Positions 7,732 through 46,396 of a stretch of DNA of 64,000 nucleotides are shown here, piece after piece. The stretch covers positions 162,774 to 226,773 of IMG/VR virus record IMGVR_UViG_3300009011_000002; one strand, 5' to 3'. The first letter of the stretch is position 1, and every line of letters begins with the position of its first letter. The notes beneath the pieces are model-generated. The model ran no database searches. It was not told the DNA's origin and was given only the letters and a program-made list of their open reading frames with translations. A program made the position numbers and the translations under genes.

Positions 7732-7776
7732 TTATCACCCAAGTAATACAGGTTTGAAAACAACTGTAACTTAAAT
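7732..7776 (-). promoter_or_regulatory. early promoter with extended upstream element (copy 1)
   Basis: Minus strand ATTTAAGTTACAG-N8-AAACCTGTATTAC-TTGGGTGATAA; 38/45 identical to 46352-46396. Confidence 0.75.
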
Positions 7777-8115
7777 TTATCCGCACTGGATAACAGGTTT
7801 TGGTGGAGGGTTGGTAGGTGGAGGGAACTTACGGACCAGTTTTAAGTGCGAACATTTGACCAATGCAAGTTCACCGAAGTCAGTCTCACCTGTCGACGTC
7901 ACGTACTCCAGTTCGCATGGAGGTGTAGCATGGGCCACTATCCATGCTGCATCGTCCGCGTTATTGTCGAAGACGTAGAACGACGTCTCATGCTTCGAGT
8001 TACCATCCCGCATGCAGGGAATGAATCGGATCAAGTGAACGTGGGTGCCGATGTTGACCTTCGTGATGTCAGCATCAGTGATGATACAAAGATCACCTTT
8101 CTCGAGCTTGTCCAT
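7777..8115 (-). CDS. hypothetical protein
   Basis: 112 aa; KGDL.II...NIG..V.L pattern common in small phage proteins. Confidence 0.7.
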   Translation of the reverse strand: MDKLEKGDLCIITDADITKVNIGTHVHLIRFIPCMRDGNSKHETSFYVFDNNADDAAWIVAHATPPCELEYVTSTGETDFGELALVKCSHLKLVRKFPPPTNPPPKPVIQCG

Positions 8116-8117
8116 AG

Positions 8118-8558
8118 TTACCCCTTAGGCTTCTTCCAGCCGTAGTCAGCTTTCCAGAACACCAGTTCTTTACCTGGCCAATCAGAGAACACACTGTTCA
8201 ACGCCATGATGTCGTATTCATCGAAATCATAGGCAATCGAAATATGGGGGAGTGGGGTCTCGTAGGCATGCTGGTAACCGGCATCCCGCAAGCGGCGGAA
8301 CTCTTCGTTGAGGTCCGGGCTGGTGAGGTGGAAGACTACACCATCACCGAGGGGTTCCAGCTTGGTGACGAATGCACGGAACTCACGCTCCGGGTGCAGT
8401 TCAGCCAGTGGGCGGTCGATACCACGGTCGTCGAAGATTATGGTGGAGTGCAGGTCATGCTTGGGGATCTGTACCCCACATTCGCCCAGGAGCTTGTAGA
8501 TCTCCATGATGAACTCGGGTTTCAGTTCTGCGGCTACGTAGCTGTAGTCACGTTCCAT
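8118..8558 (-). CDS. acb1: 2H phosphoesterase, Acb1/T4 gp57B-like anti-CBASS nuclease
   Basis: Two HxT/S motifs (LHSTI, PHISIAY), N-terminal YVAA, 146 aa; layout matches T4 gp57B as recalled. Confidence 0.75.
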   Translation of the reverse strand: MERDYSYVAAELKPEFIMEIYKLLGECGVQIPKHDLHSTIIFDDRGIDRPLAELHPEREFRAFVTKLEPLGDGVVFHLTSPDLNEEFRRLRDAGYQHAYETPLPHISIAYDFDEYDIMALNSVFSDWPGKELVFWKADYGWKKPKG

Positions 8559-8815
8559 TATTTCTTTTTCCTTGTAACGAAGATAGCGTGGATATTAGGT
8601 CTACTGCCAATGCGTTGGTTCAAGCGGCGACCCACCAAAGCTTGTTTAGAACTCGGGTGTGGGCAATCGTAAGCGAAGTAGGAAGAACCGTTGGTAAAAT
8701 AAACAAGGTCAGGAAGTTCCGGGTAAGGAGTAAAACTCATCCCCCCAAAAGATAACACGCCCAGGTCTGAGTGATCACAAGTGCCCGTCATCACTATTCT
8801 TGGAAACATAATCAC
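8558..8815 (-). CDS. hypothetical protein
   Basis: 85 aa, coupled to the Acb1-like gene. Confidence 0.6.
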   Translation of the reverse strand: MIMFPRIVMTGTCDHSDLGVLSFGGMSFTPYPELPDLVYFTNGSSYFAYDCPHPSSKQALVGRRLNQRIGSRPNIHAIFVTRKKK

Positions 8816-8823
8816 CCCAAAGC

Positions 8824-8866
8824 AAAAAAGAAAAGGTTAAGTACCGTCCGGGTAACCGGACGGTAT
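8824..8866 (-). terminator. intrinsic terminator
   Basis: TACCGTCCGG-N4-CCGGACGGTA followed by a T-rich tail on the minus strand. Confidence 0.75.
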
Positions 8867-8868
8867 TG

Positions 8869-9078
8869 TTACTGAATAATGCTTACAGTAACTTGGATCA
8901 ACGGGCCATCTTTACTCAGCTTATTGGAGAGCCGGGTAATAGCCTGGCGCTGTTCGTCAGAGAACGCACGGAGACTGCTGAACACGTTCGTGGTGAGCAC
9001 GTGATTTCCGAGTGTAAATAACACATGTTTCTTGGCGTCATAGCCGGCTTTACGAGCAAGACCGAGAAGACCGCTCAT
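8869..9078 (-). CDS. hypothetical protein
   Basis: 69 aa, coupled. Confidence 0.65.
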   Translation of the reverse strand: MSGLLGLARKAGYDAKKHVLFTLGNHVLTTNVFSSLRAFSDEQRQAITRLSNKLSKDGPLIQVTVSIIQ

Positions 9079-9245
9079 TAGTCGATCGTCCAGCGGGGGT
9101 TCTTGATGTAGACCGACTGGATGGTGCCTTTCTTTAGGCGTTGTTGCAGACGTTCAGCAGCGGCTTTGGATTCCTCCACCATGGCGAGAGGACCGCTGTG
9201 GGAGAGACGGTGTGCATCCACGAACATCAAGTACTTGCTTTCCAT
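9078..9245 (-). CDS. hypothetical protein
   Basis: Start moved to MESKYL (9245), which has an AAGGA RBS. Confidence 0.6.
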   Translation of the reverse strand: MESKYLMFVDAHRLSHSGPLAMVEESKAAAERLQQRLKKGTIQSVYIKNPRWTID

Positions 9246-9249
9246 GGTG

Positions 9250-9585
9250 TTACTTCCTTTTGATTTTGACGATGTAAGGTGAAGACGGCGACGAAGAGAG
9301 TGGGACAGTTTCAAATTCCCGACCTTCGAAAACAGCTGCATTACGTTCAACAACGCTTCGCGTAGCTTCGGTGACAGCCTGAGCGAAGGCAGCTTTGGTA
9401 TAGGTTGCACGAGGACCTCCGTTGTCAATCCAGTGGGGTGGAAGATCGACATGAGGGGCAAGGGCCTCTACAAACTTTTTGGCGTCGGCTTTGTCGATCT
9501 CTTGTGCCCGCCATTGCAACCAGTCCAGGTTGATTACGTATGGACTGACGTCAACTGCGTGGAGCAGGGGTGGTGGTATTTGCAT
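9250..9585 (-). CDS. hypothetical protein
   Basis: 111 aa, AGGAGG RBS. Confidence 0.75.
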   Translation of the reverse strand: MQIPPPLLHAVDVSPYVINLDWLQWRAQEIDKADAKKFVEALAPHVDLPPHWIDNGGPRATYTKAAFAQAVTEATRSVVERNAAVFEGREFETVPLSSSPSSPYIVKIKRK

Positions 9586-9593
9586 AAGACCTC

Positions 9594-9872
9594 CTAGATC
9601 TCGTTGACCGTAAACTCCAAGGTCTCCGAGAAGCTCATACCGTTCATGAAATCTTCCCCGATCTCGGCTTTGGTGATAAAGCCGTTCTCGACAGTAATAT
9701 GGTACTCGTGGTCGGAGATAGTTGGGTGCTTACGGATGACCACCACCTTAGGCCCGCCCACAACACCCAAGACCTTTTCCAAGGCATAGGTGTCAATCGG
9801 TTTACCGACGGCAGCGGCTTTAGGACGATACATCCAGTCGTTCTTGTAACGGTAGAAGTGAATCATGGTCAA
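9594..9872 (-). CDS. hypothetical protein
   Basis: 92 aa tiling ORF. Confidence 0.7.
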   Translation of the reverse strand: MTMIHFYRYKNDWMYRPKAAAVGKPIDTYALEKVLGVVGGPKVVVIRKHPTISDHEYHITVENGFITKAEIGEDFMNGMSFSETLEFTVNEI

Positions 9873-10225
9873 TCCTTGGGGTAAGCGTTGGGATACTTGC
9901 TGTCGTCCTCGTCTTCGATTTCAACCGCCCAACGATGGGTAACCATTTCCAGTGCCAAAGGATCTACAACACCACCCATCTCTTTGGCCACTTCCGTAAG
10001 CAAGGTGGGGTGGTAGTTGTGGTCACCCATTAAGCAACCGCCGACCCTTTTCTCTACTTTCCTTAGTACATCGTCGGGATCGATGTTTTCTACCCGACCG
10101 TCGGGATGGAGGGCATACACGCTGTACCACTTGCAGTAGTTCTCCATGGTCACAATAGGTCGACCTTCCGGGTCAATCTCTTGAGCCAGCAATGGAATAC
10201 CGCGGTGACTTACGTACTTGGCCAT
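9869..10225 (-). CDS. hypothetical protein
   Basis: 118 aa tiling ORF. Confidence 0.75.
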   Translation of the reverse strand: MAKYVSHRGIPLLAQEIDPEGRPIVTMENYCKWYSVYALHPDGRVENIDPDDVLRKVEKRVGGCLMGDHNYHPTLLTEVAKEMGGVVDPLALEMVTHRWAVEIEDEDDSKYPNAYPKD

Positions 10226-17051: not shown

Positions 17052-17064
17052 GTAATATAGGTTT
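17052..17064 (-). promoter_or_regulatory. early promoter
   Basis: Exact AAACCTATATTAC on the minus strand. Confidence 0.8.
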
Positions 17065-23579: not shown

Positions 23580-26500
23580 TTATGGCAAGAGCTCCGCCTC
23601 ACGCAGGAACGCGAAGATGCCCTCGTCTTGTGGGAACCCGGTACTGATCGGAATGATCCCCCCTTCACGGGTGAAGCTGAAGAGGAAGTCACCCACCATG
23701 AGCGGCTGCAACCGTTGGATACTGAGGATCTGCAACTGAGCGGTTGTGACCACCCCCACCAACATCATCGAACCCGACTTACGGAGTTTGACACCAGAGA
23801 TGAAATACCCGGGCGTGTCATCCTCGATTGTCGCGTAGACGTAAAACGTCTTGTTCGCTGGGGCTGGGTCGATATCCCGCAGGTCTATGGAACCCCCCGG
23901 CATCTCGTAGTTGGTTCCGTTGATCATCATCCGGATACCATCCTGGAAGAACAGTGTCCAGCCTGTTTGCGGGTACACGGTAGGACCAATATACCAGTCA
24001 ATAACCCCGGTTGTTTCATCGGTCTTGTGCAGCAACCGCGCGGCACCGCCGGTGTAGTCGTAGACCGCTGGAGTCACGGTGTTGATACGGCCAGTGTCCA
24101 CACCCCCCGTCAACCCCACATCACTCATACCCACCTTCGGGATTGGTGCACACAAGTCTGGCACCGACCACGACGCTTGGTAGGAGAAAATGTTCTCGAG
24201 CTTGTTGGTCGGGATATCCACATCAAACCGCGCCGTTTGCCGGGTATAGATGGTTGCTGTGGTGTTGGTGGTGTAGGCATTCATGTTGTATATCTGCAAC
24301 TTGTTACCGTCGCGGTAGATGTACATCCCGGCTTTGGAACGAGTACCTACCAATCCCAATAGATTCTGCTCGGCAACCCGGTTGTTGATTGCGCTGCTAT
24401 AAGCCGCAGACGTATCCAGGACAGTGATGTCCTTGATCCAATGCACATCCGGATGGTCGGCATTGGGTGCTTCTACTACGGGGCGGAACAACACAAAGAT
24501 CTGGCGGGTGAACTGCTTGGCAGGGTCCTGGAACGCAATGATTGCAATGCCCAAATTCAAGCCTTTGAACATCCCACCCATCTCGTTACCAAGGATGTGG
24601 AAACATACCGACCATGGCTTGTGTGCCGTGTAAACTGCCGGAATCATCGCTTCCATCTTGTCGATGAGTTCTTTCCGTACCCCGTAGAAACTGGTTGGGG
24701 TATACGTTGCCCGTTTGGTACCGGCATCCAAGACCTTGTTGAACGTCCGTGCGCAGGAGATCAACATGCTGTTGGCTGCTGGGGCCGTGAAACCAGCCGA
24801 CCTCGGGTAGGAATGCCCCGCCCCCATGGAGGAGTACCCCATAGACGCCAATGACGTACTACCGCATTCTACCCCACCTGCTGTCAACTCAGCCGCACTT
24901 CCGGTGATACCGATAGGGGCTTCGTAATACGCCATGTTGGTTTGGTAGATGTCGTTGGTCAATGGGCGAGACTTGATCCCACTGACTTCCGTGTTGGTCA
25001 CTTCAGGTCGTACAGCGTAAGGACCCGAGACTTTACGGAAATACGTCGCACGGGTGTTAGTTACCGGGTTTGTCGCAGAGTACAGTTCACCATCAGCTTC
25101 GTACGTCATGGCTGCTGGGAACACACCACTCAGCAATGGAGAACCCACCATCTGACTCACCCGGCGCTGTTCCTTGACCGGGGTGTAGATAATGTCCATA
25201 CGTTGCGACAGAACTTCCGCGGCGGTCTTACGGCCTTCATACACCAGCTTGGTCATGTACGCCGGGAAGTTGTTACCCCCCGAAGACGTGGCCATGAGAA
25301 TCTCACCACTGTCAAGAATAACCCCACACGAACCAGCAGCCTGACCGTAGCCATCGTAGAACTGGTAGTAGTGGGCCCGGGTGTAATCCTGGCGTTCGGT
25401 TTCCGTGGTGTTTTCGTAGTCGGCCGTCCAAGATGGGTTACGGAACACCTCCGTGAACACGCCTGTCGCTGGGTTGAACTCGTAACCGGTTCCCATTACC
25501 GACGAAATGTTTCGAAGTTCAGTAGCGGTACGGTAACTGGAGTTCATGCCCTGCAAGATGAAGAGGTATTCAGAAACCGAGTTGTTAGGCTTCTTAGCGT
25601 TCAGGAACATCGTCTTACCACCACGGTTGGTGGAAATCGGAGGTTGCATGAAAGTGATCGGACCCCAACCGGTGAGGACGCCGTTAGTGCGGACTTGCTG
25701 CATCGGCTGGAAGCGCTCGACGTTGGTCTGCTGAACGTTCTCGTAGTTCTTGTAGGTGAGCAGGATTTGCTCCCATTCGAGAATGTCGTGGTTCTCTTTG
25801 AACTTCGACACTGGGATCCGGAAGAACAAGTGCACGTCAACGTTGCTGGTACCTGGGGAGATAATCAGAACAACATAATCACCCATCAGGTGGATGCTCA
25901 GGCGGTTATCCGTGTTGGCATAAACCGACAGCACAGCTTTACCCTTAGCCAGCACTGGGGCCATGTTGACTTCCGTGTACTGATGCGCGGTAGCATCCAG
26001 TGTACCGTTAGTCAAGGCAACGAACCAACGGTCCAAACCATCATCACCTACCATGATCACACGGTGGTTACTCCCACCCACCACGGTCGTTGGGTTGAAG
26101 TTCTTAGCCAACAACGAAGGGGCTTCGTACTTATAACCGGTGTAGGTGATCTTTGGGTTGGTGGTGAAGAATTCGGCAATCTGGGAGTAGTACAACCCCT
26201 CGTTACGACCGTCGTTGTGGCTAGTCAGCATCATGATCAGCCCGGACTTCTCCAAGCAGAATGCCGACGATACCGACAACGACCCTAAACCTTCAAAGGC
26301 ACCGGAGATGTTTGGCGGAATGAAACTCTCACCACCAAACTTACTGATTGGCATGATACCCGTACGCATCGCTGCATCCGTGTCCGGGATGTACGACTTG
26401 GCGAGTTCCTGGATACCCTGAGGAGTCGACAGTACGTCCGCACGAATACCTGCCTTGTCCTCTGCCAACGTTGCCGTGGCGAAGTTAGGGTGGTTACCCA

Positions 26501-27173
26501 TGAGGATGTCGAACTTGGTGATCAGGTGTGGGGAGTGGTAGTTGTCGTCGTGGTTCTTCAACAACGTCATGTACTGTGCTTTGGTGGTCTTCAGCACGTT
26601 GTACGCGTTGGTGATGGTTGTGTCCACGTCAACGCCCGTCGACGCACCTGTGGTCTTCCAGAGGCCTTGGAAGACCTTACAGAAGTAGGTGAGCTCCCAC
26701 CAGTCACCAATCTCGGTTTTGATGTTCTGGATGTGCAATGCCGGAGGCAGGGTCTCTGGCATCCCGAAGACCTTGTCCCACGGGATAGGGACCTTACCTT
26801 TGTGGAGCTTCTCCATCCACCCCGCCAGTTGACTGCGAGGGACGAAGTACGCACCGATCGATTGGTAGTCGATGGTGATGTGGGTGTTCGCTGCCAGCAC
26901 CGCATTGGACACACGGATGAAACTGCACACCGACTTGTTGGACGCATTACAGAAGGGAACAAACTCCCCCTCGAAGAAGTAGTCAGTGTTAAGCTTGAGC
27001 AACCCACCGGCTTGGTTGTACACCTTCACCATTGCAGGTACTGCAAAGAACGGGGAACCATCCGGGATTACCCAGTTCAACGTTTTGTCTTTCAGAAGAA
27101 TCTTTTCACCCGGGATGGTGTTCACCGGGTTTGTTGCGTGGACGTCAAACTCTACCAGTCGAATGGGATCCAT
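23580..27173 (-). CDS. tail fibre protein (paralog 2)
   Basis: 1197 aa; PISKFG..FIPP.I.G.FEGLG and IDLRDIDP.PANKTFY shared with paralog 1. Confidence 0.8.
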   Translation of the reverse strand: MDPIRLVEFDVHATNPVNTIPGEKILLKDKTLNWVIPDGSPFFAVPAMVKVYNQAGGLLKLNTDYFFEGEFVPFCNASNKSVCSFIRVSNAVLAANTHITIDYQSIGAYFVPRSQLAGWMEKLHKGKVPIPWDKVFGMPETLPPALHIQNIKTEIGDWWELTYFCKVFQGLWKTTGASTGVDVDTTITNAYNVLKTTKAQYMTLLKNHDDNYHSPHLITKFDILMGNHPNFATATLAEDKAGIRADVLSTPQGIQELAKSYIPDTDAAMRTGIMPISKFGGESFIPPNISGAFEGLGSLSVSSAFCLEKSGLIMMLTSHNDGRNEGLYYSQIAEFFTTNPKITYTGYKYEAPSLLAKNFNPTTVVGGSNHRVIMVGDDGLDRWFVALTNGTLDATAHQYTEVNMAPVLAKGKAVLSVYANTDNRLSIHLMGDYVVLIISPGTSNVDVHLFFRIPVSKFKENHDILEWEQILLTYKNYENVQQTNVERFQPMQQVRTNGVLTGWGPITFMQPPISTNRGGKTMFLNAKKPNNSVSEYLFILQGMNSSYRTATELRNISSVMGTGYEFNPATGVFTEVFRNPSWTADYENTTETERQDYTRAHYYQFYDGYGQAAGSCGVILDSGEILMATSSGGNNFPAYMTKLVYEGRKTAAEVLSQRMDIIYTPVKEQRRVSQMVGSPLLSGVFPAAMTYEADGELYSATNPVTNTRATYFRKVSGPYAVRPEVTNTEVSGIKSRPLTNDIYQTNMAYYEAPIGITGSAAELTAGGVECGSTSLASMGYSSMGAGHSYPRSAGFTAPAANSMLISCARTFNKVLDAGTKRATYTPTSFYGVRKELIDKMEAMIPAVYTAHKPWSVCFHILGNEMGGMFKGLNLGIAIIAFQDPAKQFTRQIFVLFRPVVEAPNADHPDVHWIKDITVLDTSAAYSSAINNRVAEQNLLGLVGTRSKAGMYIYRDGNKLQIYNMNAYTTNTTATIYTRQTARFDVDIPTNKLENIFSYQASWSVPDLCAPIPKVGMSDVGLTGGVDTGRINTVTPAVYDYTGGAARLLHKTDETTGVIDWYIGPTVYPQTGWTLFFQDGIRMMINGTNYEMPGGSIDLRDIDPAPANKTFYVYATIEDDTPGYFISGVKLRKSGSMMLVGVVTTAQLQILSIQRLQPLMVGDFLFSFTREGGIIPISTGFPQDEGIFAFLREAELLP

Positions 27174-27241: not shown

Positions 27242-30200
27242 TCAAGGGAGCATTTCAGTCGAACGCAGCCATGGGATCTGGCCTTCGTCGTTAATGAGAC
27301 CCGACGACGCTGGAATGCTGTTACCACGCTTCACTTCAGACACTCGGTGGCCGTCTATTGCAAACACGTTGAAACGTTCTACCGAGATGATCTGACGATC
27401 GTTGGTGACAGCCCTGCCGACCCACAGTTGGAAGTTGGATTCCAACCGCTTATCTTCCGACACTTCGTACTTCGCTTCCCCGCCATCCATCAAGGCGTAA
27501 ATGTAGAACGTCTTGTTGGCAGGGGTCGGGTTGATATCGCGCAAGTCGATGTTCCCCGTGGGCAGAGTATACAGCTTGCCGTTAAAGACCGCTGTCAGTG
27601 CTGCCGAGAAGTACAACACCCAACCTGTTGCAGGGTAGGTATGACCGTACAGGATCTCCTTGGTTGGCCCTTGGAACATGGTACCGGCACCACCCGTGGA
27701 CGTGCTATGGGCAATGGCGTACACCACACCGTCATCAGGTGCCACACACTTGTGGCGACCACCACCGCTTTGTCCAATGATGGTTATCCAAGTACTACCG
27801 TCTGTAGACCACCGCTTAGTGGTGCGGTCAAAGCTGAAGGTGCAGTACGACACCAACCCGTCACCTGGACCCGACGCATAGATAGCCGGGTCAAAGAATC
27901 CGGTGACTGTGTTACCGTCCACATGGAACCCGGCACGTTGCGTACCGTGGGTGGAGTTCGGGTTGCTGTTGCCCCACAGTGCGGCGTCCCAGTAAGTGCT
28001 GGTCAAAGAAACCGCGCAGTTCTCGAATATGGCGTGCATCTTGTCCAGAACAGTGAACCCAGTTACCGTACGGTTGGTGGAGCCGGAGTAGATGGGGGTA
28101 ATACTCAGCAACGTCTCACGACGGTTAGTGGTCCCCACCTTGCCCCAACAAATTTGCACCAATACCGGGAGCCAACCGAACTTCGCGGTCAGAGGACCGT
28201 TAGGGTCACAGATCGACACGAACACACTTGGGCAAGCGTTCAACCCAGCCACATCGTCCACTTGCTGCTTGAGCAACGCCACGATAGCCGCGGGATACAA
28301 GATCGATCCCGTAGGAACAATGGTGATGGTCCCGTTGGTTTCGATCTTCCGGGTGTGTCCGGTCATGATCATGACGTCTTCAGGGTTGCTCCCCATAGGC
28401 CATGCACTGGCACCTGGCCACGCAGACAGGTCACACCAGCGTTTCTGGGTCCCAACACAAAACGCATTCTCCGCCAAGTCAATCCCGTACGTGCTCAACT
28501 GGGCTGTTGGGCAAGTAACACTGGCGGCGCCCACCCGAGGGTCTGCGTTGACCAGTCGAACGTCGTTACTCAGTGGGCGTGACAACACATTCGGGTAGAA
28601 CAAGTTGGTCACTTCCGAGCGCTGGGCCAAACGACCGTTACCCACTCGGTAGAACAGTTGCAAGTAGCCGAGGGTGTCTGGGTTTGGCGTGGTGTAGAAA
28701 TCACCGCCGTTACCCAAAATGAACGAACGTGGTTTGATGCTGGATTTCAACGGGCTGAGCACCGACTCCAGCACATCACTGATCTGGCTCATGGAACCCA
28801 GTTGAGTGTTCCACTGCCGGTTCATGGTATCATAGCGGGTCTTCCAGTCCTTGGGACGCCATATCACCGTACCCCGTGGGAATGACTGGTAAGTCCCATA
28901 AGACACCACAATAGAACCGTCTTCCAAAACAGTCCCGCCTTGGCAGTTATCTTGGAACACCAGGGCGTTCATGCTGATCGGCCCGATACTTGGTAGGTTG
29001 GTGTAATCCAGCGTGTACCGCGGGGTCTGGTACAACAACGTCATGACGTTGGTAGTTGGATCGAACTCATAGACCATTTCGATCATGAGCTCATAACCTG
29101 CCGTGAACTCCGGGATGGTGTACTTCGACCACCACGCACCTGTAAAGCGCAACAAAAACTTCCCAGGTTTACTCGGGATGGGTGAAACGTACGTTTGCTG
29201 TGAGCGGTAGCACCCCGTGCACGAGACGTTTTCCGTCTGCACAATGGGGAAGTACCACTTCAAGAAGGACGCCCCCAAACCGTTAGGATGAGGGATCGGA
29301 GTCCCCCAACGCCACACCGGGGAGTTGGTCCATTGCACACCCTCGCCGTCTTTAAAGGTCAGGTTAACCAATGCCGCAGTCACCGGCAATTGAGCTTCGA
29401 CGGTCGCCTTCGGTACCCGGCCAATGTAACGGTAGTTGAAACCACCCCCCACATCAGCAAGTTTGTTGCGGTACGGAGTAGCCATGATGATGTAGATCCA
29501 ATCCCCCACCAACACCACGTTGGTGTACTGGAGGAAAGAGATCATATCCGCACCCGCATTAACCGCAGGGGCAAACGCCGACATGTCCAGCTTACTGATC
29601 ACGTGTTTCGACGGGTTCAAGGATCCGTTGGTCAACCCAACATACCACTGGGCTTTACGGCTGTCGGCCACCAGGATGACTTCGCCACCACTGCCTTGTG
29701 CAATGAAGTTCGGGACAGTCCCGTCTGCTTCAAAACGTTGGTGGTTGTAGCGGTAACCGGTGTACTGCCGCTTGGGGTTGTCGTACGGGGTTTGGACCAC
29801 CGAGTAATACAGACCGTCCACACGACCGTCCATGCGGTTTTCCAAGAACACAAGCGAGCCATCGGTTTCCATGCAGATACCGGCGGTCTCGTACATCCCA
29901 CCCAGACCTTCAAACGAACCGTCAATCGATGGTGGAATGAAGTTGGTGTTACCGAAGCGGGAGATTGGCAGGGCGTTGGCTGGCAGGAACTCGTCGCTGT
30001 TAAAGCCGAAGTTGTCAATGATGGTCTTCAGGCCCGACACCGTAACGTGGAGATCGTTACGACCTTGCAGCAGAGTGTTACCCCGCGCTGTGGCAAAGTT
30101 GTCTACCTTCTCCAACCCGAAGTCTGCCGTCTTCAATCCGTGCGCGTTATACGCATTGATGTGGTTGTTCAAGAAGGTGGTCAACATCTTCTTGTTGAGT

Positions 30201-30775
30201 TTGAGGTAGTTGTTGAGCAGGTTGAGGTAGTGGTCTACCCGAATCTCGATCGGCTTACGCAGGCCCGACTCGGCGTATTGCAGGATGGTGTCCAAGCAAT
30301 CTACCACGTCCTGGAAGGCCACAATCGTGTACAGCAGGGAGTGACCATGCACCGGCGGTGGGAAGACGATCGGTTTGTCAGTGAGATTATCCCAATGAAC
30401 AGGACGGTCGTCATTCGCAGCGGCGTCAATCAGTTGGAGCATCGACGCGTCAATCAGCGAGAATTCACCCACTACCTTGTACGACACCAACACGTCTTTG
30501 ATGTCGGTATCGATCATTTCGATGGTGCAGGAAACTTCCTTACCTGCCAGCGCAGTCAGACGTGACATCAAGGTGTAGATGCGGTAGTGAACATCCGGGA
30601 CGAGTGGACTCCCATTGGCCGCTTTCAGTTCGAGGCTATCGACGAAGAAAGGTGCATGGCGTGGAGTCCAAACGATCAACCCCTCGGTGAGTTCCTTGGG
30701 TTCATCGAGAACGTTGTTATCCGGATTGATCCCGCGGATGCTCGTCTGGTATTCACGAACAATGGGAAATTGCAT
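27242..30775 (-). CDS. tail fibre protein (paralog 1)
   Basis: 1177 aa, collinear with 23580-27173. Confidence 0.8.
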   Translation of the reverse strand: MQFPIVREYQTSIRGINPDNNVLDEPKELTEGLIVWTPRHAPFFVDSLELKAANGSPLVPDVHYRIYTLMSRLTALAGKEVSCTIEMIDTDIKDVLVSYKVVGEFSLIDASMLQLIDAAANDDRPVHWDNLTDKPIVFPPPVHGHSLLYTIVAFQDVVDCLDTILQYAESGLRKPIEIRVDHYLNLLNNYLKLNKKMLTTFLNNHINAYNAHGLKTADFGLEKVDNFATARGNTLLQGRNDLHVTVSGLKTIIDNFGFNSDEFLPANALPISRFGNTNFIPPSIDGSFEGLGGMYETAGICMETDGSLVFLENRMDGRVDGLYYSVVQTPYDNPKRQYTGYRYNHQRFEADGTVPNFIAQGSGGEVILVADSRKAQWYVGLTNGSLNPSKHVISKLDMSAFAPAVNAGADMISFLQYTNVVLVGDWIYIIMATPYRNKLADVGGGFNYRYIGRVPKATVEAQLPVTAALVNLTFKDGEGVQWTNSPVWRWGTPIPHPNGLGASFLKWYFPIVQTENVSCTGCYRSQQTYVSPIPSKPGKFLLRFTGAWWSKYTIPEFTAGYELMIEMVYEFDPTTNVMTLLYQTPRYTLDYTNLPSIGPISMNALVFQDNCQGGTVLEDGSIVVSYGTYQSFPRGTVIWRPKDWKTRYDTMNRQWNTQLGSMSQISDVLESVLSPLKSSIKPRSFILGNGGDFYTTPNPDTLGYLQLFYRVGNGRLAQRSEVTNLFYPNVLSRPLSNDVRLVNADPRVGAASVTCPTAQLSTYGIDLAENAFCVGTQKRWCDLSAWPGASAWPMGSNPEDVMIMTGHTRKIETNGTITIVPTGSILYPAAIVALLKQQVDDVAGLNACPSVFVSICDPNGPLTAKFGWLPVLVQICWGKVGTTNRRETLLSITPIYSGSTNRTVTGFTVLDKMHAIFENCAVSLTSTYWDAALWGNSNPNSTHGTQRAGFHVDGNTVTGFFDPAIYASGPGDGLVSYCTFSFDRTTKRWSTDGSTWITIIGQSGGGRHKCVAPDDGVVYAIAHSTSTGGAGTMFQGPTKEILYGHTYPATGWVLYFSAALTAVFNGKLYTLPTGNIDLRDINPTPANKTFYIYALMDGGEAKYEVSEDKRLESNFQLWVGRAVTNDRQIISVERFNVFAIDGHRVSEVKRGNSIPASSGLINDEGQIPWLRSTEMLP

Positions 30776-42152: not shown

Positions 42153-42165
42153 ATAAGTAACCATA

Positions 42166-42195
42166 CCCTACCCACCCCGTAAGGGATGGGTAGGG
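42166..42195. terminator. hairpin at a convergent junction
   Basis: CCCTACCCA.CCC-GTAA-GGG.TGGGTAGGG. Confidence 0.75.
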
Positions 42196-42206
42196 CTTAT
42201 GGCCGC

Positions 42207-43229
42207 TTAACGTTTAGGAAACACTACAACACCTGGTGGGATGTCCTTGTAGACTTGCAGGACGGCGTCCGCTTTACCCTCTTCGATCTCCTTCAGGACA
42301 CGCAACAATTCTTTTTCCGTATAGATCCTGATGATGCAGTCCAGGACTTGGTTGGGCGCGACGTTAGCATTGATGTCCCACGCTCTGCCAGGTCGACCGT
42401 TACGGAAAGCCTCGGAGAGTTGGAGTTTGGGTTCACCCTCAATAACTACGTGTTCAACAAACACTGAAAGCGGAAGGCTGATGGTAGGGATGCTTTCCCC
42501 ACGACCGGCATAGTAGCCGGCACCCGCGTATGTATTAAGAGGAGCCATGACCAGCACAGGGTCCATACCGCGATGGAAGATCCGGACCTGGGCAACGCTA
42601 CAAGAAGCCGCGGCTTTTTCTGGAATGGAATACAGATACTGTTCCCCGTAAACCTTGAGCAGGTGAGCCAATATCATTTCTGGGGTAGGTGCGTTTGCTG
42701 GCCAGTGGGATGTATCGAGATCTTTCTGTACGGCAATCATGGGGTCTTTGCCGATCTGGGAGGTGAACAGGTGGGTGAAGGCGCAGACGAGTAGTGGGAT
42801 GGCACCGCCCTTGAAGGCGTTCCCCATAGGGCGTCCTGGCCATGGATCATTCACCATACCCGGCATGTGGAGTGGTGTTCCATATGCATTGAACTGCGGG
42901 CCGAAGACGCTAGGTTGCATTCCCACAGATTCTTGTTTACGGGGCTCGACGGACAGGAAAACTTCGTCGATGCTGTTGAAGGTGATTTTCACCTGTCTGG
43001 TGAAGAGGATGGTCAAGGCACCTTGTTCTTCGTTCAACCACTCGCACTGTTTCAGCTTATGGATGATCTGATCGATCACCTCAGGCTGGAAGGAGAACAA
43101 GGTGCCGAGGTGGGCAACATGGCCGTAGACCACCTCATTGAGTCTGAGACCAGGGCGCATCATCCGTGCTGTGTGGATGTCTTCGTTGTTGATGGAGATG
43201 GTGGTAGTGACATTACGTTGATCGGACAT
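42207..43229 (-). CDS. hypothetical protein
   Basis: 340 aa, AAGGA RBS. Confidence 0.8.
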   Translation of the reverse strand: MSDQRNVTTTISINNEDIHTARMMRPGLRLNEVVYGHVAHLGTLFSFQPEVIDQIIHKLKQCEWLNEEQGALTILFTRQVKITFNSIDEVFLSVEPRKQESVGMQPSVFGPQFNAYGTPLHMPGMVNDPWPGRPMGNAFKGGAIPLLVCAFTHLFTSQIGKDPMIAVQKDLDTSHWPANAPTPEMILAHLLKVYGEQYLYSIPEKAAASCSVAQVRIFHRGMDPVLVMAPLNTYAGAGYYAGRGESIPTISLPLSVFVEHVVIEGEPKLQLSEAFRNGRPGRAWDINANVAPNQVLDCIIRIYTEKELLRVLKEIEEGKADAVLQVYKDIPPGVVVFPKR

Positions 43230-43238
43230 GATGATTCC

Positions 43239-43478
43239 TTATTCGTTGTCGGGTTTTTCAGCGAGGCGTTCGCCGATAATGGTCAGCGTCGTCCCCAGCG
43301 GTTGTTCCGGTACGGGGAAGAGGTTGGGTTTCGGTTCGGTTTCACGCAAACGCTTTTGAATAAGCCTGAGCATGACAGGACCCGGGATATCAGCACCCCG
43401 GGACGTGGCGTACAGGTTATACCGAAGCAACATATCTGCCAGCTCGGTATTGGTGAGGTGGTCGTAGTTACCGGACAT
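43239..43478 (-). CDS. hypothetical protein, paralog of the next gene's N-terminus
   Basis: 79 aa, GAGG RBS. Confidence 0.75.
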   Translation of the reverse strand: MSGNYDHLTNTELADMLLRYNLYATSRGADIPGPVMLRLIQKRLRETEPKPNLFPVPEQPLGTTLTIIGERLAEKPDNE

Positions 43479-43480
43479 GT

Positions 43481-44317
43481 TTACCTCGGCATGGAAGTAA
43501 CCGTGTAAGTTACGTCAGTGAAGTTACCCATGGCAGTGTTGACGTAGACTTGGTATTGCCCGTCTACCCTTTTGCAATAGACGTGGAACTGTTGCTTGAC
43601 CGATTCGAAGTAGACACCCTGAATGTTGGCCAGTTGCGCTGAACCCAACGTCGTAAGGTCGACTTTCACCATGCCGATCTCACCCAGGATTTCACCCGCC
43701 TTACCCCAGTAGAACGACGGCACCAGTCTAAGTACACTGTGGGCCATGGTTTCCCAGTCCCTGAGGTACACGCTGAAGGTTTCTTCGCTGGCCTGGATCT
43801 GAGGTGCCTGTGTTTCAGCGGCTTGAGCGTAAATGATCCACGAATCGATGTGACTCCGCGCGAGCACCTCACCTTTGAACTGGTGGTGGACAATGTCCCA
43901 GCCGAGCGTCAACAGGAACTTCGGACCACCCGGAACGTTCTTGGCGATCAACCCCAGTTCGTCGATCTTCTCGAGGATGTCGGTGATTGTCTCGTCGCGA
44001 GAACCCGGGAGCACCACGCGATATTCGGCCATTGCTTCAAGGACGGTATCACGGAGGTTGATGTTGCGTTCGAAGTAGTAGTTCAGATCGACGGTGCAGT
44101 AACGTTTCTTACTGTCGATCTCAACATCTTCAACTTCTTCTTCGGTATTACGCAGCCGCTCCTGGATCAGCGAGATCAGGTCATGGCCGTACGGGATGTA
44201 CTTGTCCATGGCCTTGAAACGTTCAGGCATTTGGTCGAACTGAATCAGGCGGTTGAGACCGATCAGCTGGGCCAGGTCTTCGTTCGAGAGGTACGGGTAC
44301 TTGTTGTTCTGTTCCAT
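43481..44317 (-). CDS. hypothetical protein
   Basis: 278 aa, AAGGAG RBS. Confidence 0.8.
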   Translation of the reverse strand: MEQNNKYPYLSNEDLAQLIGLNRLIQFDQMPERFKAMDKYIPYGHDLISLIQERLRNTEEEVEDVEIDSKKRYCTVDLNYYFERNINLRDTVLEAMAEYRVVLPGSRDETITDILEKIDELGLIAKNVPGGPKFLLTLGWDIVHHQFKGEVLARSHIDSWIIYAQAAETQAPQIQASEETFSVYLRDWETMAHSVLRLVPSFYWGKAGEILGEIGMVKVDLTTLGSAQLANIQGVYFESVKQQFHVYCKRVDGQYQVYVNTAMGNFTDVTYTVTSMPR

Positions 44318-44327
44318 GGTTATCTCC

Positions 44328-44708
44328 TTAAGGATTGATACGTTTGAGTTGGACGGACCAGTAAGAATCCGGCACCATGATTCGGTCGAAAGGCGACGTG
44401 TTGTACGTCAGCAGGCCATAGCGGTTGCGGGGTTTCTTGATCGTGAGGATAACCTTGGACACAGGCACCCGCATGATGTCGTACAGGCCGTTGCACTCAA
44501 AGTGCGAGGCAAAGGTGGCTACCATGTCCTTGGGGGCAGGCAGTCCTTTGGGGAACTTGTCTTCTGGGATACCTTCCAGGGCCCGCTGGACGTATGCCCA
44601 GAAGTCAGCTGGATAAGCTTCGAACTCGCGGAAGCACACGTCCAAACGAATCTGGAGCATGCCTTCAATGTTTCCGAAGTTCAGTGTCGTTGGTTTATTC
44701 TCGGCCAT
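44328..44708 (-). CDS. hypothetical protein
   Basis: 126 aa, GAGG RBS. Confidence 0.75.
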   Translation of the reverse strand: MAENKPTTLNFGNIEGMLQIRLDVCFREFEAYPADFWAYVQRALEGIPEDKFPKGLPAPKDMVATFASHFECNGLYDIMRVPVSKVILTIKKPRNRYGLLTYNTSPFDRIMVPDSYWSVQLKRINP

Positions 44709-44710
44709 CG

Positions 44711-45145
44711 TTAAACCCTCTGTATGTTGGGGGTGCAGTTAATTTCCCACGCAGGCATTGGAGTGATCTTGCGTTTACCGCTCGCACAAAGGATCCGCGA
44801 AGTGGGGAACCGTAGGGTGCTGGTGTTGTAGATGCACAGCTTTGTGGTTTGTGTACGGGTACGGATCTCTTCGTAGACACCACCAGCTTCAAAGGTCTCC
44901 CGCAGTATACGGCAGAACGTGTGGACATCCAGGTTGTTGGGGATACGGATCAAAGCACCTTCCGCCAACCCATCGATGATCTCACGCAGGAAATACCAGA
45001 AGGCATCCAGTTCGTTTTCAAGATCGTAGTCATGGAAAACCGAACTCAGGTTAATCTGGATGAAAGTGTCCTTACTGTGGCTGTAAGGTTCGACGGCATC
45101 CAGCATGGCCTGGCGACGGTTGTCACGTTTAGTATGGTTGGTCAT
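44711..45145 (-). CDS. hypothetical protein
   Basis: 144 aa, GGAG RBS. Confidence 0.75.
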   Translation of the reverse strand: MTNHTKRDNRRQAMLDAVEPYSHSKDTFIQINLSSVFHDYDLENELDAFWYFLREIIDGLAEGALIRIPNNLDVHTFCRILRETFEAGGVYEEIRTRTQTTKLCIYNTSTLRFPTSRILCASGKRKITPMPAWEINCTPNIQRV

Positions 45146-45157
45146 TTACAGTTCTCC

Positions 45158-45186
45158 GAAAAAATAAGGGATCCGTGTGGACCCCT
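45158..45186 (-). terminator. intrinsic terminator
   Basis: AGGGG.TCC/GGA.CCCCT stem followed by TATTTTTT on the minus strand. Confidence 0.65.
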
Positions 45187-45206
45187 TTGCAACCAGTGAC
45201 TTCCTG

Positions 45207-45482
45207 TTAAGCCAGGAAGGCAGCAGGTTGCTTGTTAACAAAGGTGTTCAGCAGTTTCCCGTTGAACTCCATGTGTTCTTTAAGCGACTTAGGGAAGTCG
45301 GTGATTTCCAGCTTGGTGAGGAACGCGTACAGACGATCCTCCAAGGAGAGGGTGTCGTCTTTAACGCTGCGAGCACGTTGTACTTCCAGCATGCAGCGGA
45401 AGCGTACGAGTTCTACTTCGGACTTCGGAAAATCAATTACCGAGTAGCCCATCAGTTTGTCAAAGATCTTTGCGACACCCAT
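45207..45482 (-). CDS. hypothetical protein
   Basis: 91 aa, AAGGAG RBS. Confidence 0.75.
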   Translation of the reverse strand: MGVAKIFDKLMGYSVIDFPKSEVELVRFRCMLEVQRARSVKDDTLSLEDRLYAFLTKLEITDFPKSLKEHMEFNGKLLNTFVNKQPAAFLA

Positions 45483-45530
45483 GTCAATCTCCTTAAATAG
45501 AAGTGAGGCGGACGTCTGTCCGCTCTCGTA

Positions 45531-45878
45531 TTAAACGCCGCCGCCTACCTCACCGAATGCACCGATGATTTCAGACACAGCGATTGCAGTGCTTGCACCA
45601 GTCAGACCTGCAGCCGCGCTGTTCAGGATCTTGCCGGTAGTACCGAACAGCTCAGCAGTCTTGAAGACATTGCCTACAGCGAAACCAACAGCAGCGCCAG
45701 CAGCAGCGCCCACCAGGCCTGCAGCGATTGGAGCACCCTTTGCCACAGCTGCAGCGCCGCCCAACAGGCCGCTCGCAACACCTACACAGACACCTATCGA
45801 AATACCTTCTTCACGCTTATTGCTTTGCAGGAAGGCGTTCATGGAAGCTTGAGCAGCAGCGTTGTTCATTGCAGTCAT
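45531..45878 (-). CDS. small glycine-zipper membrane protein
   Basis: GVCVGVASGLLGGAAAVAKG..AAGLVGAAAGAAVGFAVG; AGGAG RBS. Confidence 0.8.
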   Translation of the reverse strand: MTAMNNAAAQASMNAFLQSNKREEGISIGVCVGVASGLLGGAAAVAKGAPIAAGLVGAAAGAAVGFAVGNVFKTAELFGTTGKILNSAAAGLTGASTAIAVSEIIGAFGEVGGGV

Positions 45879-45954
45879 GGTAAATCTCCTAAAAGTATTA
45901 AGTAATGGGACAACCCTGTGTCATCCCATTGGAACTAATTGATTGAAAGTTGGA

Positions 45955-46314
45955 TTAGAACAGAACCACGTTTTCCAGGGTGCCGCAGCTCCACTGGTTG
46001 TCGACTTGTGCGGCGTTGTACTTGTCAACGCCAGCTTGCAGACCATTGGCTGCGCTGTTGATGTTACCACCCACCGAAGTTCTGCTGATGGTTGCCTTGC
46101 CAGTCTCATCATCCAGGTAGACGATGTTCAGGCAGAAGTGGGTGTTGGCATACAGCCCAACGATGTGACGGTGGCCATTCTTATTGACCAGTTCAGCCAG
46201 ACCACCAATCGAGCGATCTTCGCGATTGTTGTTGTGGTCGTCGCTTACTTTCAAGTTGTTAGCTTTAATAGCTTCCAGGACTTGGGCGAAGGTAGCTTGT
46301 TGAGTGCGGGACAT
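45955..46314 (-). CDS. hypothetical early protein
   Basis: 119 aa, AGGAG RBS, first gene after the promoter. Confidence 0.8.
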   Translation of the reverse strand: MSRTQQATFAQVLEAIKANNLKVSDDHNNNREDRSIGGLAELVNKNGHRHIVGLYANTHFCLNIVYLDDETGKATISRTSVGGNINSAANGLQAGVDKYNAAQVDNQWSCGTLENVVLF

Positions 46315-46351
46315 AGTTGTAACTCCTAAGTGTGAAAGACATTGATTGCCT

Positions 46352-46396
46352 TTATCACCCAGGTTATATAGGTCTGAGATAAACTGTAACTTAAAT
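46352..46396 (-). promoter_or_regulatory. early promoter with extended upstream element (copy 2)
   Basis: Minus strand ATTTAAGTTACAG-N8-AGACCTATATAAC-CTGGGTGATAA. Confidence 0.7.

What the first reader, a model, noticed from the sequence alone, without database searches (positions are those of the whole stretch)
7732..46396. Two distant operons share a 45-bp extended promoter and both encode glycine-zipper membrane proteins
Seen: 7732-7776 and 46352-46396 are 38/45 identical without gaps. They share ATTTAAGTTACAG upstream and GGGTGATAA downstream of the early core, and the other four early promoters lack these flanks. The two operons hold the only glycine-zipper proteins noticed in the window, with similar helix order (GAAVVGGG..AARGG....ALGTVAGAIG.F.AG versus GLLGGAAAVAKGA....LVGAAAGAAVGFAVG). 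Known: phiKZ-like phages transcribe early genes with a virion RNAP from a membrane-bound early infection vesicle, and glycine zippers oligomerise in membranes. Inference: a co-regulated immediate-early membrane-remodelling or pore module (vesicle, export or exclusion function). This is my top candidate for an undescribed system.
Basis: partly seen in the sequence, partly recalled or inferred. Interest (0 to 1): 0.75.

Follow-up and report, generated by a model that had tools for sequence, protein, structure and literature searches.

The report
Strong early promoters, paired glycine-zipper proteins
The two look-alike 45-bp sites are the best copies of this jumbo phage's ordinary early promoter. 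They drive two distantly related, uncharacterised proteins that share a three-helix glycine-zipper domain, and this promoter-gene pairing is also found in phages EL and RisingSun; what the proteins do is still unknown.

Summary
The window is the last 64 kb of a 226.8-kb phiKZ-like jumbo phage of the EL/RisingSun clade, from a rhizosphere metagenome. The 38/45 match is real, and both sites lie on the minus strand.

The match is not private to two operons. It is the full-consensus form of a bipartite early promoter:
- a TTAAGTTACAG box
- a T-rich spacer
- a CCTATATWAC core
- a GGGTGAWWA start region

About 20 early-promoter cores occur genome-wide, and nine carry the box. Two further sites (genome 74504 and 122001) are 33-36/45 identical to the reported pair.

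The glycine-zipper part of the finding holds up and becomes stronger. The C-terminus of the 506-aa protein (6149-7669) and the 115-aa protein (45531-45878) are distant paralogs of one three-helix domain:
- profile-profile probability is 93%
- no composition-matched shuffle reached the real scores

Both forms exist in EL (gp127, gp82) and RisingSun (gp122, gp87), each behind the same extended promoter. phiKZ has no detectable copy. There is no Pfam or PDB relative.

Membrane insertion is plausible from hydropathy, but early timing and function are all untested. A role as the channel for first mRNA export from the early infection vesicle is logically unlikely, because these proteins are made from that mRNA.

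Verdict: a real, conserved, uncharacterised early gene pair, and the promoter itself is ordinary.

The parts
7732..7776 (-). Promoter 1, full-consensus bipartite early promoter: box 7764-7776 (ATTTAAGTTACAG), core 7743-7755, start region GGGTGATAA 7732-7740
   Evidence: Ranks first of 20 in the leave-one-out matrix. Conserved at the orthologous place in L001, L005, L006, L050, EL and RisingSun.
7698..7723 (-). Hairpin in the 5' leader of the 506-aa gene (10-bp stem)
   Evidence: Fold. The same hairpin is predicted in the distant relative L006 (z -2.0); the leader alignment is. Weak on energy alone (z -0.8 in the window).
6149..7669 (-). g180, 506-aa long-form protein: N-terminal helical domain, disordered linker, small alpha/beta domain, helical domain, C-terminal three-helix glycine-zipper domain
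   Evidence: Orthologs are EL gp127 and RisingSun gp122. No Pfam match; phrog_29858, unknown function.
6230..6517 (-). Glycine-zipper domain of g180 (aa 385-480): conserved R-D-E-G motif, then helices 400-418, 424-447 and 451-476
   Evidence: Most conserved part of the family. 59 clusters at 50% identity. AlphaFold2 block-mean pLDDT about 83-91 over aa 401-470.
7193..7306 (-). 38-aa stretch of g180 (aa 122-159) copied from the conserved segment of the phage's own RNA polymerase beta-like gene
   Evidence: 50% identity, E 2e-7. phrog_3295 hit. The source gene is RNA polymerase beta-like. Lies in a linker with pLDDT under 50.
6096..6127 (-). Terminator-like hairpin (14 pairs plus T run) just after g180, so g180 may be largely monocistronic
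5831..6067 (-). g179, 78 aa with a signal-peptide-like N-terminus; next gene after g180
   Evidence: Translation. In RisingSun the gene in this position is a lipoprotein annotated Cor-like. No sequence similarity between the two.
46352..46396 (-). Promoter 2, full-consensus bipartite early promoter: box 46384-46396, core 46363-46375, start region GGGTGATAA 46352-46360
   Evidence: Ranks second of 20. Conserved at the orthologous place in L002-L004, EL and RisingSun.
46425..46458 (-). Long perfect inverted repeat plus T-rich tail ending the upstream 789-aa gene; together with promoter 2 it forms a terminator-promoter composite
   Evidence: Read. The same arrangement is seen in L002, EL and L050.
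46335..46353 (-). Small hairpin near the 5' end of the leader (7-bp stem), shared with the leader at genome 122001
   Evidence: Energy is not significant on its own (z -0.9).
45955..46314 (-). g219, 119 aa, first gene of unit 2, no known family
   Evidence: Conserved next to the small zipper gene in L002-L004. No significant match to the first gene of the orthologous RisingSun unit.
45531..45878 (-). g218, 115-aa short-form glycine-zipper protein: R-E-E-G motif, then helices 28-46, 51-74 and 80-112
   Evidence: Paralog of the g180 domain. Positional counterparts are EL gp82 and RisingSun gp87.
45207..45482 (-). g217, 91 aa, third gene of unit 2
45166..45187 (-). Terminator-like hairpin plus T run closing unit 2
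2115..2146 (-). Another box-carrying early promoter in the window (core TCTATATTAC 2115-2124, TTAAGTT 2140-2146), without the GGGTGATAA start region
   Evidence: Conserved in L005.
3884..3896 (-). Early promoter core without the box
17052..17064 (-). Early promoter core without the box
51724..51736 (-). Weaker early promoter core without the box

Best explanation
Shown:
- The 45-bp match is the full-consensus form of this clade's bipartite early promoter: a -35-like TTAAGTTACAG box, a T-rich spacer, a -10-like CCTATATWAC core and a GGGTGAWWA start region.
- It is a graded, genome-wide promoter class, not a private signal.
- The two sites are the best-scoring copies. They precede two distant paralogs that share a three-helix glycine-zipper domain.
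- The long form (506 aa) carries about 380 aa of other domains in front of the zipper domain. The short form (115 aa) is little more than the domain.
- This pairing of promoter and genes is kept in EL and RisingSun.

Inferred:
- The injected virion RNA polymerase reads these promoters very early and strongly.
- Both proteins insert after translation into a membrane through their zipper helices, which pack through small-residue faces into oligomers. The membrane would be the cell's inner membrane or the early infection vesicle. The long form's N-terminal part would then be held at that membrane.
- My preferred function is early conditioning of the infected envelope, such as blocking a second injection or controlling ion leak. 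Given that the proteins are membrane-bound, I put this at about one in three.
- The stated confidence refers to the regulatory and structural picture, not to this function.
For: Promoter class:
- Core and box sites are all intergenic, on the minus strand and upstream of genes.
- The leave-one-out matrix ranks the two sites first and second of 20.
- They do not resemble sigma-70 promoters.
- The phage encodes RNA polymerase beta pieces and is phiKZ-like.
- In the literature, jumbo-phage early promoters are AT-rich motifs near -10 (PMC7598289), and phiKZ adds a T-rich part upstream of -19 (PMC8244752).

Conservation:
- The box and core stand upstream of the long-form gene in L001, L005, L006, L050, EL gp127 and RisingSun gp122.
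- They also stand upstream of the short-form unit in L002-L004, EL gp82 and RisingSun gp87.
- In EL and in RisingSun, only three sites combine core and GGGTGAATA, and two of the three are the zipper genes.
- In EL the third site drives orthologs of g067 and g066.

Paralogy:
- The family profile scores 13.6-28.8 bits on the short-form proteins, against a maximum below 6 bits in 1000 shuffles each and negative scores for the reversed sequences.
- hhalign gives probability 92.8%, E 3.9e-7, over 81 columns.
- A shared R-D/E-E-G motif precedes helix 1.
- The AlphaFold2 models show matching three-helix layouts.

Membrane leaning:
- 18-24-aa hydrophobic segments are flanked by charged residues.
- g218 ranks 10th and g180 19th of 232 proteins on a transfer-energy sum.
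- Weak language-model look-alikes are glycine-zipper, MamC and colicin-pore clusters.
- The neighbouring gene after g180 carries a signal peptide, and its positional counterpart in RisingSun is a lipoprotein.
Against: - There is no expression data. The source is a rhizosphere metagenome with no RNA run, so early timing rests on motif analogy only.
A soluble helical bundle is therefore not excluded.
- No Pfam glycine-zipper model is matched, and there is no structural relative.
- The complex prediction gave no answer.
- BLASTP alone sees no similarity between the two proteins, and low-complexity composition can inflate profile scores.
- Superinfection-exclusion genes are usually variable accessory genes. 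The long form, in contrast, keeps one syntenic place across 59 diverse clusters, which suggests a more basic role.
- Enrichment of hydrophobic proteins behind box-carrying promoters is weak and post hoc (p 0.02).
Confidence: 0.6

Rival explanations
1. One reading: the two units form a dedicated, co-regulated immediate-early module that remodels or perforates a membrane. For example, it could build or open the early infection vesicle, or provide its export or import channel.
For: - The pair is conserved behind the strongest early-type promoters in three genera.
- Glycine-zipper helices are known to oligomerise in membranes (established knowledge).
- The review PMC12908238 says the vesicle's channels are unidentified, and that the nucleus assembles next to the vesicle.
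- The long form would place a 380-aa cytoplasmic part on a membrane.
Against: - A channel needed to export the first mRNAs must be present before early proteins are made, so it should come from the virion.
- Neither RisingSun gp122 nor gp87 occurs in the main text of the RisingSun paper that reports the lysate mass spectrometry (PMC6034870; a term search, the detected-protein table was not read in full).
- phiKZ, which also forms the vesicle, has no detectable homolog.
- The motif is not specific to these units.
- The helices are only weakly hydrophobic.
Confidence: 0.12
2. There is no functional link between promoter form and gene content. The promoter similarity reflects consensus strength together with copying of promoter-leader cassettes by recombination, as with the promoter-early stem-loop elements of T4-type phages. 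The zipper genes merely happen to sit behind old, well-kept copies.
For: - The site at genome 122001 copies promoter 2 and its whole leader, yet drives unrelated genes.
- Nine promoters carry the box.
- Promoter 2 is a terminator-promoter composite like those elements (PMC4122927).
- The gene content after the orthologous promoter differs between phages: one gene in RisingSun, eight here.
Against: - In EL and RisingSun, two of the only three core-plus-GGGTGAATA sites are the zipper genes.
- Chance placement of both zipper genes among the first two genes of three units is about 6e-4. This is a post hoc estimate.
- The pairing survives down to about 38% protein identity.
Confidence: 0.2
3. The zipper domain is not membrane-inserted. 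It is a soluble or peripherally bound glycine/alanine-rich three-helix bundle, for instance an oligomerisation or tethering module for the long form's N-terminal domains.
For: - The helices have low hydrophobicity, with invariant charged residues at their ends.
- AlphaFold2 models a compact three-helix unit.
- There is no signal peptide.
- Methyl-coenzyme M reductase alpha (PF02249) clusters appear among the look-alikes; that their glycine-rich helices are soluble is my own knowledge.
Against: - The hydrophobic segments have transmembrane length and are flanked by charges.
- g218 helix 1 has Kyte-Doolittle 1.97.
- The nearest named look-alikes are membrane glycine-zipper, MamC and colicin-pore clusters. 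All score under 0.8, so they are leads only.
Confidence: 0.12
4. The short form is a holin-like or lysis-timing protein, and the early promoter is only one of its promoters.
For: - One structure-based look-alike is a holin cluster (TM 0.63).
- Pinholins use small-residue zipper faces (established knowledge).
- Late promoters of phiKZ-like phages cannot be predicted from sequence (PMC7598289).
Against: - The gene sits behind the best early promoter and between a hairpin terminator and another terminator.
- No lysozyme or peptidase family is found among the genes of the two units and their near neighbours that were scanned; g217 was scanned, g179-g177 too.
- A TM score near 0.6 for a 100-aa helical protein means little.
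Confidence: 0.06

Closest known systems
Early promoters of phiKZ-like jumbo phages read by the virion RNA polymerase (PMC7598289; PMC8244752)
   Same: - A conserved AT-rich motif of about 10 nt of the TATATTAC type, with a T-rich stretch upstream.
- It lies in front of co-oriented early operons.
- The phage encodes multisubunit RNA polymerase pieces.
   Different: - About nine of roughly twenty sites here add a -35-like TTAAGTTACAG box about 8 nt upstream of the extended core, and a GGGTGAWWA start region.
- I found no description of such a box in the papers I read.
- EL's record annotates only the 19-nt core as 'putative phage promoter'.
Promoter-early stem-loop (PeSL) cassettes of T4-type phages (PMC2839356; PMC4122927)
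   Same: - Promoter 2 and its counterparts are a hairpin terminator followed directly by an early promoter.
- A near copy of promoter 2 plus its leader stands in front of unrelated genes at genome 122001.
- The gene content after the orthologous promoter varies between phages.
   Different: - A different phage family, polymerase and motif.
- Promoter 1 has no hairpin upstream.
- Recombination at these sites is inferred, not shown.
Pfam glycine-zipper families (PF13488 Gly-zipper_Omp, PF13441 Gly-zipper_YMGG, PF05433 Rick_17kDa_Anti)
   Same: - Repeated small-xxx-small spacing in hydrophobic helices.
- Weak language-model and structure look-alikes.
   Different: - No model is matched, even at E up to 1.
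- Here there are three helices, preceded by a conserved R-D/E-E-G motif.
- No lipoprotein signal peptide.
- The domain sits at the C-terminus of a large cytoplasmic-type protein.
EL gp127 and gp82; RisingSun gp122 and gp87 (all annotated hypothetical)
   Same: - Orthologs or positional counterparts of the long and short forms, with the same synteny.
- The long form follows the ligase, RNase H and Acb1-like genes. The short form lies about 5 kb after the major head gene.
- All have the same extended promoter.
   Different: - 20-45% identity.
- The middle alpha/beta domain and the polymerase-derived stretch are lacking in some.
- In EL and RisingSun the short form is the first gene of its unit; here it is the second.
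Early membrane or envelope proteins that block superinfection (T4 Imm and Spackle, T5 Llp, Cor)
   Same: - Small proteins aimed at the envelope and made early.
- The gene next to the long form is a secreted protein here and a lipoprotein annotated Cor-like in RisingSun.
   Different: - No sequence or fold relation was found.
- The long form is conserved and syntenic rather than accessory.
- The function is untested.

Membership tests
Jumbo-phage early promoter read by the virion RNA polymerase | Conserved AT-rich motif of about 10 nt, repeated upstream of co-oriented operons | tested here: met
   CCTRTATWAC occurs 10 times, and a looser core about 20 times in intergenic, co-oriented positions. 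The feature is described in PMC7598289.
Jumbo-phage early promoter read by the virion RNA polymerase | T-rich stretch upstream of the -10-like element | tested here: met
   The TTT(T)C run has high information content in the 20-site alignment. phiKZ precedent in PMC8244752.
Jumbo-phage early promoter read by the virion RNA polymerase | The phage encodes multisubunit RNA polymerases | tested here: met
   phrog_3015 and phrog_3295 hits at E 7e-201 and 1e-218. Which set is packaged in the virion was not determined.
Jumbo-phage early promoter read by the virion RNA polymerase | Transcripts start just downstream, early in infection, independently of the host polymerase | not testable with these tools
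   No RNA run holds this phage.
Sigma-70 host promoter | TTGACA, 16-18 nt, TATAAT, with at least 9 of 12 matches | tested here: not met
   Neither site is listed by the consensus scan.
One shared glycine-zipper domain family (long form and short form) | Significant collinear profile match that composition alone does not explain | tested here: met
   Scores of 13.6-28.8 bits against a shuffle maximum below 6 bits in 1000 shuffles each. hhalign probability 92.8%, E 3.9e-7. An earlier shallow-profile comparison gave only 39%, and pairwise BLASTP was negative.
Pfam glycine-zipper families (PF13488, PF13441, PF05433) | Match to the family model at or above its gathering score | tested here: not met
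   No such family is listed at E up to 1 for either protein, nor among 25 family members.
Integral membrane protein | Hydrophobic helices of transmembrane length; membrane fractionation | tested here: inconclusive
   Segments of 18-24 aa with Kyte-Doolittle 1.0-2.0. Only g218 helices 1 and 2 pass 1.6. No dedicated predictor was available and there is no experiment.
PeSL-like terminator-promoter cassette | A hairpin terminator directly followed by an early promoter, repeated at borders of variable gene blocks | tested here: inconclusive
   Met for promoter 2 and its counterparts, and by the cassette copy at genome 122001. Not met for promoter 1, where the upstream gene's stop codon abuts the box.
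Holin | Late expression and a place in a lysis cassette next to an endolysin | tested here: not met
   An early-type promoter lies upstream, and no lytic-enzyme family is found among the genes of the two units and their near neighbours that were scanned. Late promoters cannot be predicted, so timing remains unproven.
Known superinfection-exclusion families (Imm, Sp, Cor, Llp) | Sequence or fold relation to a characterised member | tested here: not met
   No Pfam, PHROG-annotated or PDB relation. g179 is not similar to the RisingSun Cor-like lipoprotein.

The most novel reading that the evidence does not exclude
The long and short glycine-zipper proteins are a clade-specific pair of immediate-early membrane components. 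They co-assemble on the early infection vesicle or the inner membrane. There the long form's cytoplasmic domains would organise a step not yet assigned to any protein, such as handing the genome from the vesicle to the nascent phage nucleus or sealing the infected envelope. They would be the first phage-encoded membrane proteins of chimallivirus early infection to be identified.
Probability: 0.15. Interest if true: 0.85.

Novelty: new variant of a known kind. Interest (0 to 1): 0.5.

Why it matters
Nucleus-forming jumbo phages start infection inside a lipid vesicle, and no phage membrane protein has been tied to that stage (PMC12908238).

This work defines two things:
- A bipartite form of the early promoter for the EL/RisingSun clade, which helps annotate early genes in uncultured relatives.
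- A conserved, unannotated pair of paralogous glycine-zipper proteins that sit behind the best copies of that promoter in three genera.

Two of those phages, EL and RisingSun, are cultivable. The questions of when these proteins are made, where they go, and what happens without them can therefore be tested directly.

If the proteins turn out to be ordinary exclusion or accessory proteins, the main value is the promoter model and a new protein family entry.

Tried and rejected
- Nucleotide and translated searches of the phage collection with the two loci and the two proteins found nothing. The low-complexity filter probably hides the zipper domain, so relatives were found through the large protein sets instead.
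- Pairwise BLASTP between the two zipper proteins, and with the standalone member P0059, was not significant. A first shallow profile comparison gave only 39% probability. Only the 59-member profile with shuffle controls, and the deeper hhalign run, gave a clear signal.
- Pfam, PHROGs and PDB sequence searches gave no informative family.
- Foldseek against PDB and the viral library found only the Joad ortholog, plus weak PepSY/BLIP-like matches to the small alpha/beta domain.
- The Atlas look-alikes all scored under 0.8, so they are leads only.
- The complex prediction of the long-form domain with the short form gave no answer.
- The search for RNA runs found only metagenome DNA.
- Enrichment of hydrophobic proteins behind box-carrying promoters is weak (p 0.02, uncorrected), so I do not rely on it.
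- The leader hairpins are not significant by folding energy alone.
- One call failed on a mistyped reference.

Full report
**What the window is.** The window is bases 162774-226773 of a single 226,773-bp contig with 52.8% G+C. Its large genes match PHROG families of phiKZ-like phages: major head protein, a 1087-aa virion protein, a polymerase, an NAD ligase and an SbcC-like protein. The head protein is 62.6% identical to Erwinia phage RisingSun/Joad and 58% to Pseudomonas phage EL. The genome also holds RNA polymerase beta pieces. The only run that holds all of the stretch's sampled words is a rhizosphere metagenome (two others hold 5-7%), and no RNA run was found. Nearly all genes run on the minus strand (191 of the 232 genes I called).

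**The observation.** Sites 7732-7776 and 46352-46396 are 38/45 identical without gaps. On the minus strand each reads as a 13-nt box ATTTAAGTTACAG, 8 nt, a 13-nt core, 2 nt, then GGGTGATAA.
- Promoter 1 lies 74 nt upstream of a 506-aa gene (6149-7669, called g180 here). That gene is followed by a 14-pair terminator-like hairpin at 6096-6127.
- Promoter 2 follows a long perfect hairpin that ends the upstream 789-aa gene. It precedes three genes of 119, 115 and 91 aa (g219, g218, g217), and a terminator-like hairpin at 45166-45187 closes the unit.
- The quoted zipper strings lie in aa 385-480 of g180 and in g218.

**The motif is not private.** Genome-wide the strict core occurs ten times. A looser core occurs about twenty times in intergenic, co-oriented positions.
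- Nine of these sites carry a TTAAGTT-type box at the same distance, including one in the window at 2115-2146.
- Sites at genome 74504 and 122001 are 33-36/45 identical to the reported pair.
- Many sites share G-G-T-G just after the core.
- In a leave-one-out weight matrix of 20 sites the reported pair ranks first and second (46.0 and 45.3 bits). Next come 74504 (44.6) and 122001 (42.7).
- The 45-bp match is therefore the full consensus of a graded promoter class.
- The class fits what is published for jumbo-phage early promoters: an AT-rich conserved motif near -10 (PMC7598289), with a T-rich part upstream in phiKZ (PMC8244752).
- It does not fit a sigma-70 consensus.
- The box itself I did not find described. 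EL's record annotates only the core as 'putative phage promoter'.

**The genes behind the other strong copies carry no zipper.** Site 74504 drives g067 and g066; the latter has a signal peptide. Site 122001 drives three small unrelated genes. The 122001 site copies not only promoter 2 but its whole leader up to the ribosome site. This resembles the terminator-promoter cassettes of T4-type phages that mediate module shuffling (PMC4122927).

**The proteins.** g180 has homologs at 38-85% identity in a handful of metagenome contigs, and g218 has three.
- The C-terminal 100 residues of g180 are by far its most conserved part.
- A profile of that part finds 59 clusters at 50% identity. Most are 350-520 aa with the domain at the C-terminus, and three are standalone small proteins.
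- A distant member lies in the same gene order as here: ligase, RNase H, Acb1-like gene, then the long form.
- EL gp127 and RisingSun gp122 are orthologs. phiKZ has no match at E 0.01.
- One standalone member lies in an element carrying integrase and resolvase genes, not in a jumbo phage.

**The two zipper regions are related.** BLASTP between g180 and g218 shows nothing. The 59-member profile, however, hits g218 and its three homologs and nothing else in the phage's 232 proteins.
- Scores are 13.6-28.8 bits. The maxima are below 6 bits in 1000 composition-preserving shuffles of each protein, and the reversed sequences score negative.
- The alignment is collinear. It runs from an F-x-L-x-x-x-R-D/E-E-G motif through helix 1, a K/R-G turn, helix 2, a 14-residue polar linker and helix 3.
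- With EL gp82 and RisingSun gp87 added to the short-form set, hhalign gives probability 92.8%, E 3.9e-7, over 81 columns.
- AlphaFold2 models give the same three-helix layout: 400-418, 424-447 and 451-476 in g180; 28-46, 51-74 and 80-112 in g218.
- I conclude that they are distant paralogs, with the caveat that glycine/alanine-rich sequence is a hard case for any score.

**The pairing with the promoter is conserved.**
- EL gp82 (118 aa) and RisingSun gp87 (123 aa) are small three-helix zipper proteins. They lie where g218 lies, about 5 kb after the head gene and before the portal-side virion gene.
- Each is preceded by the extended promoter, and in EL also by a hairpin terminator.
- The long-form genes of EL, RisingSun and four metagenome relatives likewise carry box and core.
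- In EL and in RisingSun only three sites combine the core with GGGTGAATA, and two of the three are the zipper genes.
- In EL the third site drives orthologs of g067 and g066. EL and this phage therefore share the same three full-consensus units.
- Placing both zipper genes by chance among the first two genes of three units has a probability of about 6e-4. That figure is post hoc.

**Membrane or not.** The hydrophobic segments are 18-24 aa long and flanked by charges. They are mild, with Kyte-Doolittle means of 1.0-2.0.
- No Pfam glycine-zipper model is matched.
- Language-model look-alikes are glycine-zipper, MamC and colicin-pore clusters at scores under 0.8, so they are leads only.
- Neither protein has a signal peptide. 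With the domain at the very C-terminus, insertion of the long form would have to follow translation.
- Foldseek and PDB searches give no relative for any domain.
- The complex prediction gave no answer.

**Function.** Nothing here measures function.
- The vesicle-export idea faces a logical problem. Transcripts must leave the vesicle before early proteins exist (inference from PMC12908238).
- Neither RisingSun gp122 nor gp87 occurs in the main text of the paper that reports the lysate mass spectrometry (a term search; I did not read the detected-protein table in full) (PMC6034870).
- phiKZ lacks the family.
- The neighbours lean towards the envelope. A secreted small protein follows g180 here, and a lipoprotein annotated Cor-like follows it in RisingSun. 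The third full-consensus unit encodes a secreted protein.
- I therefore prefer an early envelope-conditioning role, at modest probability. I keep a vesicle or nucleus hand-over role as the most novel reading.

**Verdict.** The interesting result is a conserved, unannotated pair of paralogous glycine-zipper proteins tied to that promoter form in three genera.

Noticed in passing
window 8118-8558 (-): 146-aa protein matching the anti-CBASS phosphodiesterase family Acb1 (PF23474, E 3.9e-13, 49.8 bits against a cut-off of 27). Its homologs lie one to three genes upstream of the long-form gene in the metagenome relatives. EL and RisingSun have a gene annotated 'RNA ligase' at or near this place; I did not scan those two against Acb1.
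   Followed up: partly
window 7193-7306 (-), aa 122-159 of the 506-aa protein: A 38-aa stretch 50% identical to the conserved 'K-x-x-G-x-x-G-D-K-G-V' segment of the phage's own RNA polymerase beta-like gene (genome 31143-33491). It lies in a linker modelled as disordered. It is kept in relatives down to 45% identity and is absent from P0006/P0007; EL and RisingSun were not checked for it. It could be a captured gene fragment or a mimic; unexplained.
   Followed up: partly
genome 121950-122040 (-), outside the window (locus L047): A near copy of promoter 2 together with its whole 5' leader, including the small hairpin and the ribosome site, in front of three unrelated small genes. This looks like a mobile promoter-leader cassette.
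   Followed up: partly
genome 73381-74540 (-), outside the window (locus L046): The third full-consensus promoter drives a 167-aa protein and a 155-aa protein with a signal peptide. EL gp1 and gp2 are their orthologs and sit behind EL's third full-consensus promoter.
   Followed up: partly
window 5831-6067 (-): 78-aa protein with a signal-peptide-like N-terminus directly after the long-form gene. RisingSun has a lipoprotein annotated 'Cor superinfection exclusion protein' at that place, with no sequence similarity to it.
   Followed up: partly
genome 33551, 38576, 47446, 55579, 79881 (-), outside the window: A second upstream flavour of early promoter, GGTAAGAATATTT in place of the TTAAGTT box, concentrated between 33 and 80 kb of the genome.
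   Followed up: no
genome 26771-29068, 59960-63220, 115773-118613, outside the window: A helicase, a terminase large subunit and a second helicase share a segment of about 300 aa (24-29% identity). This would fit inteins or a shared inserted domain.
   Followed up: no
genome 91533-99311 (+), outside the window: A 2592-aa protein has the richest glycine-zipper stretch of the genome (20 motifs). ORFs of similar size (about 2540-2560 aa) in EL and RisingSun passed the same zipper screen; their homology to it was not tested. I take it to be a virion or ejection protein; this was not tested.
   Followed up: no
genome 144893-146548 (-), outside the window: A 551-aa protein whose N-terminus reads to me like a GroEL-type chaperonin (not scanned against any family), behind an early promoter without the box. 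From my own knowledge, not checked here, EL has a phage chaperonin.
   Followed up: no
locus L048 3621-3962: A standalone 113-aa member of the zipper domain family lies among integrase and resolvase genes on an 11.6-kb contig. The domain therefore also occurs outside jumbo phages.
   Followed up: no
window 23580-27173 and 27242-30775 (-): Two adjacent paralogous proteins of about 1200 aa (phrog_3573 plus virion or tail-protein N-terminal parts), 25-35% identical to each other.
   Followed up: no
window 42207-45145 (-): Five further genes with no family hit lie between unit 2 and the 1087-aa virion gene. RisingSun has none of them there, so this is a variable island downstream of a conserved promoter.
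   Followed up: partly
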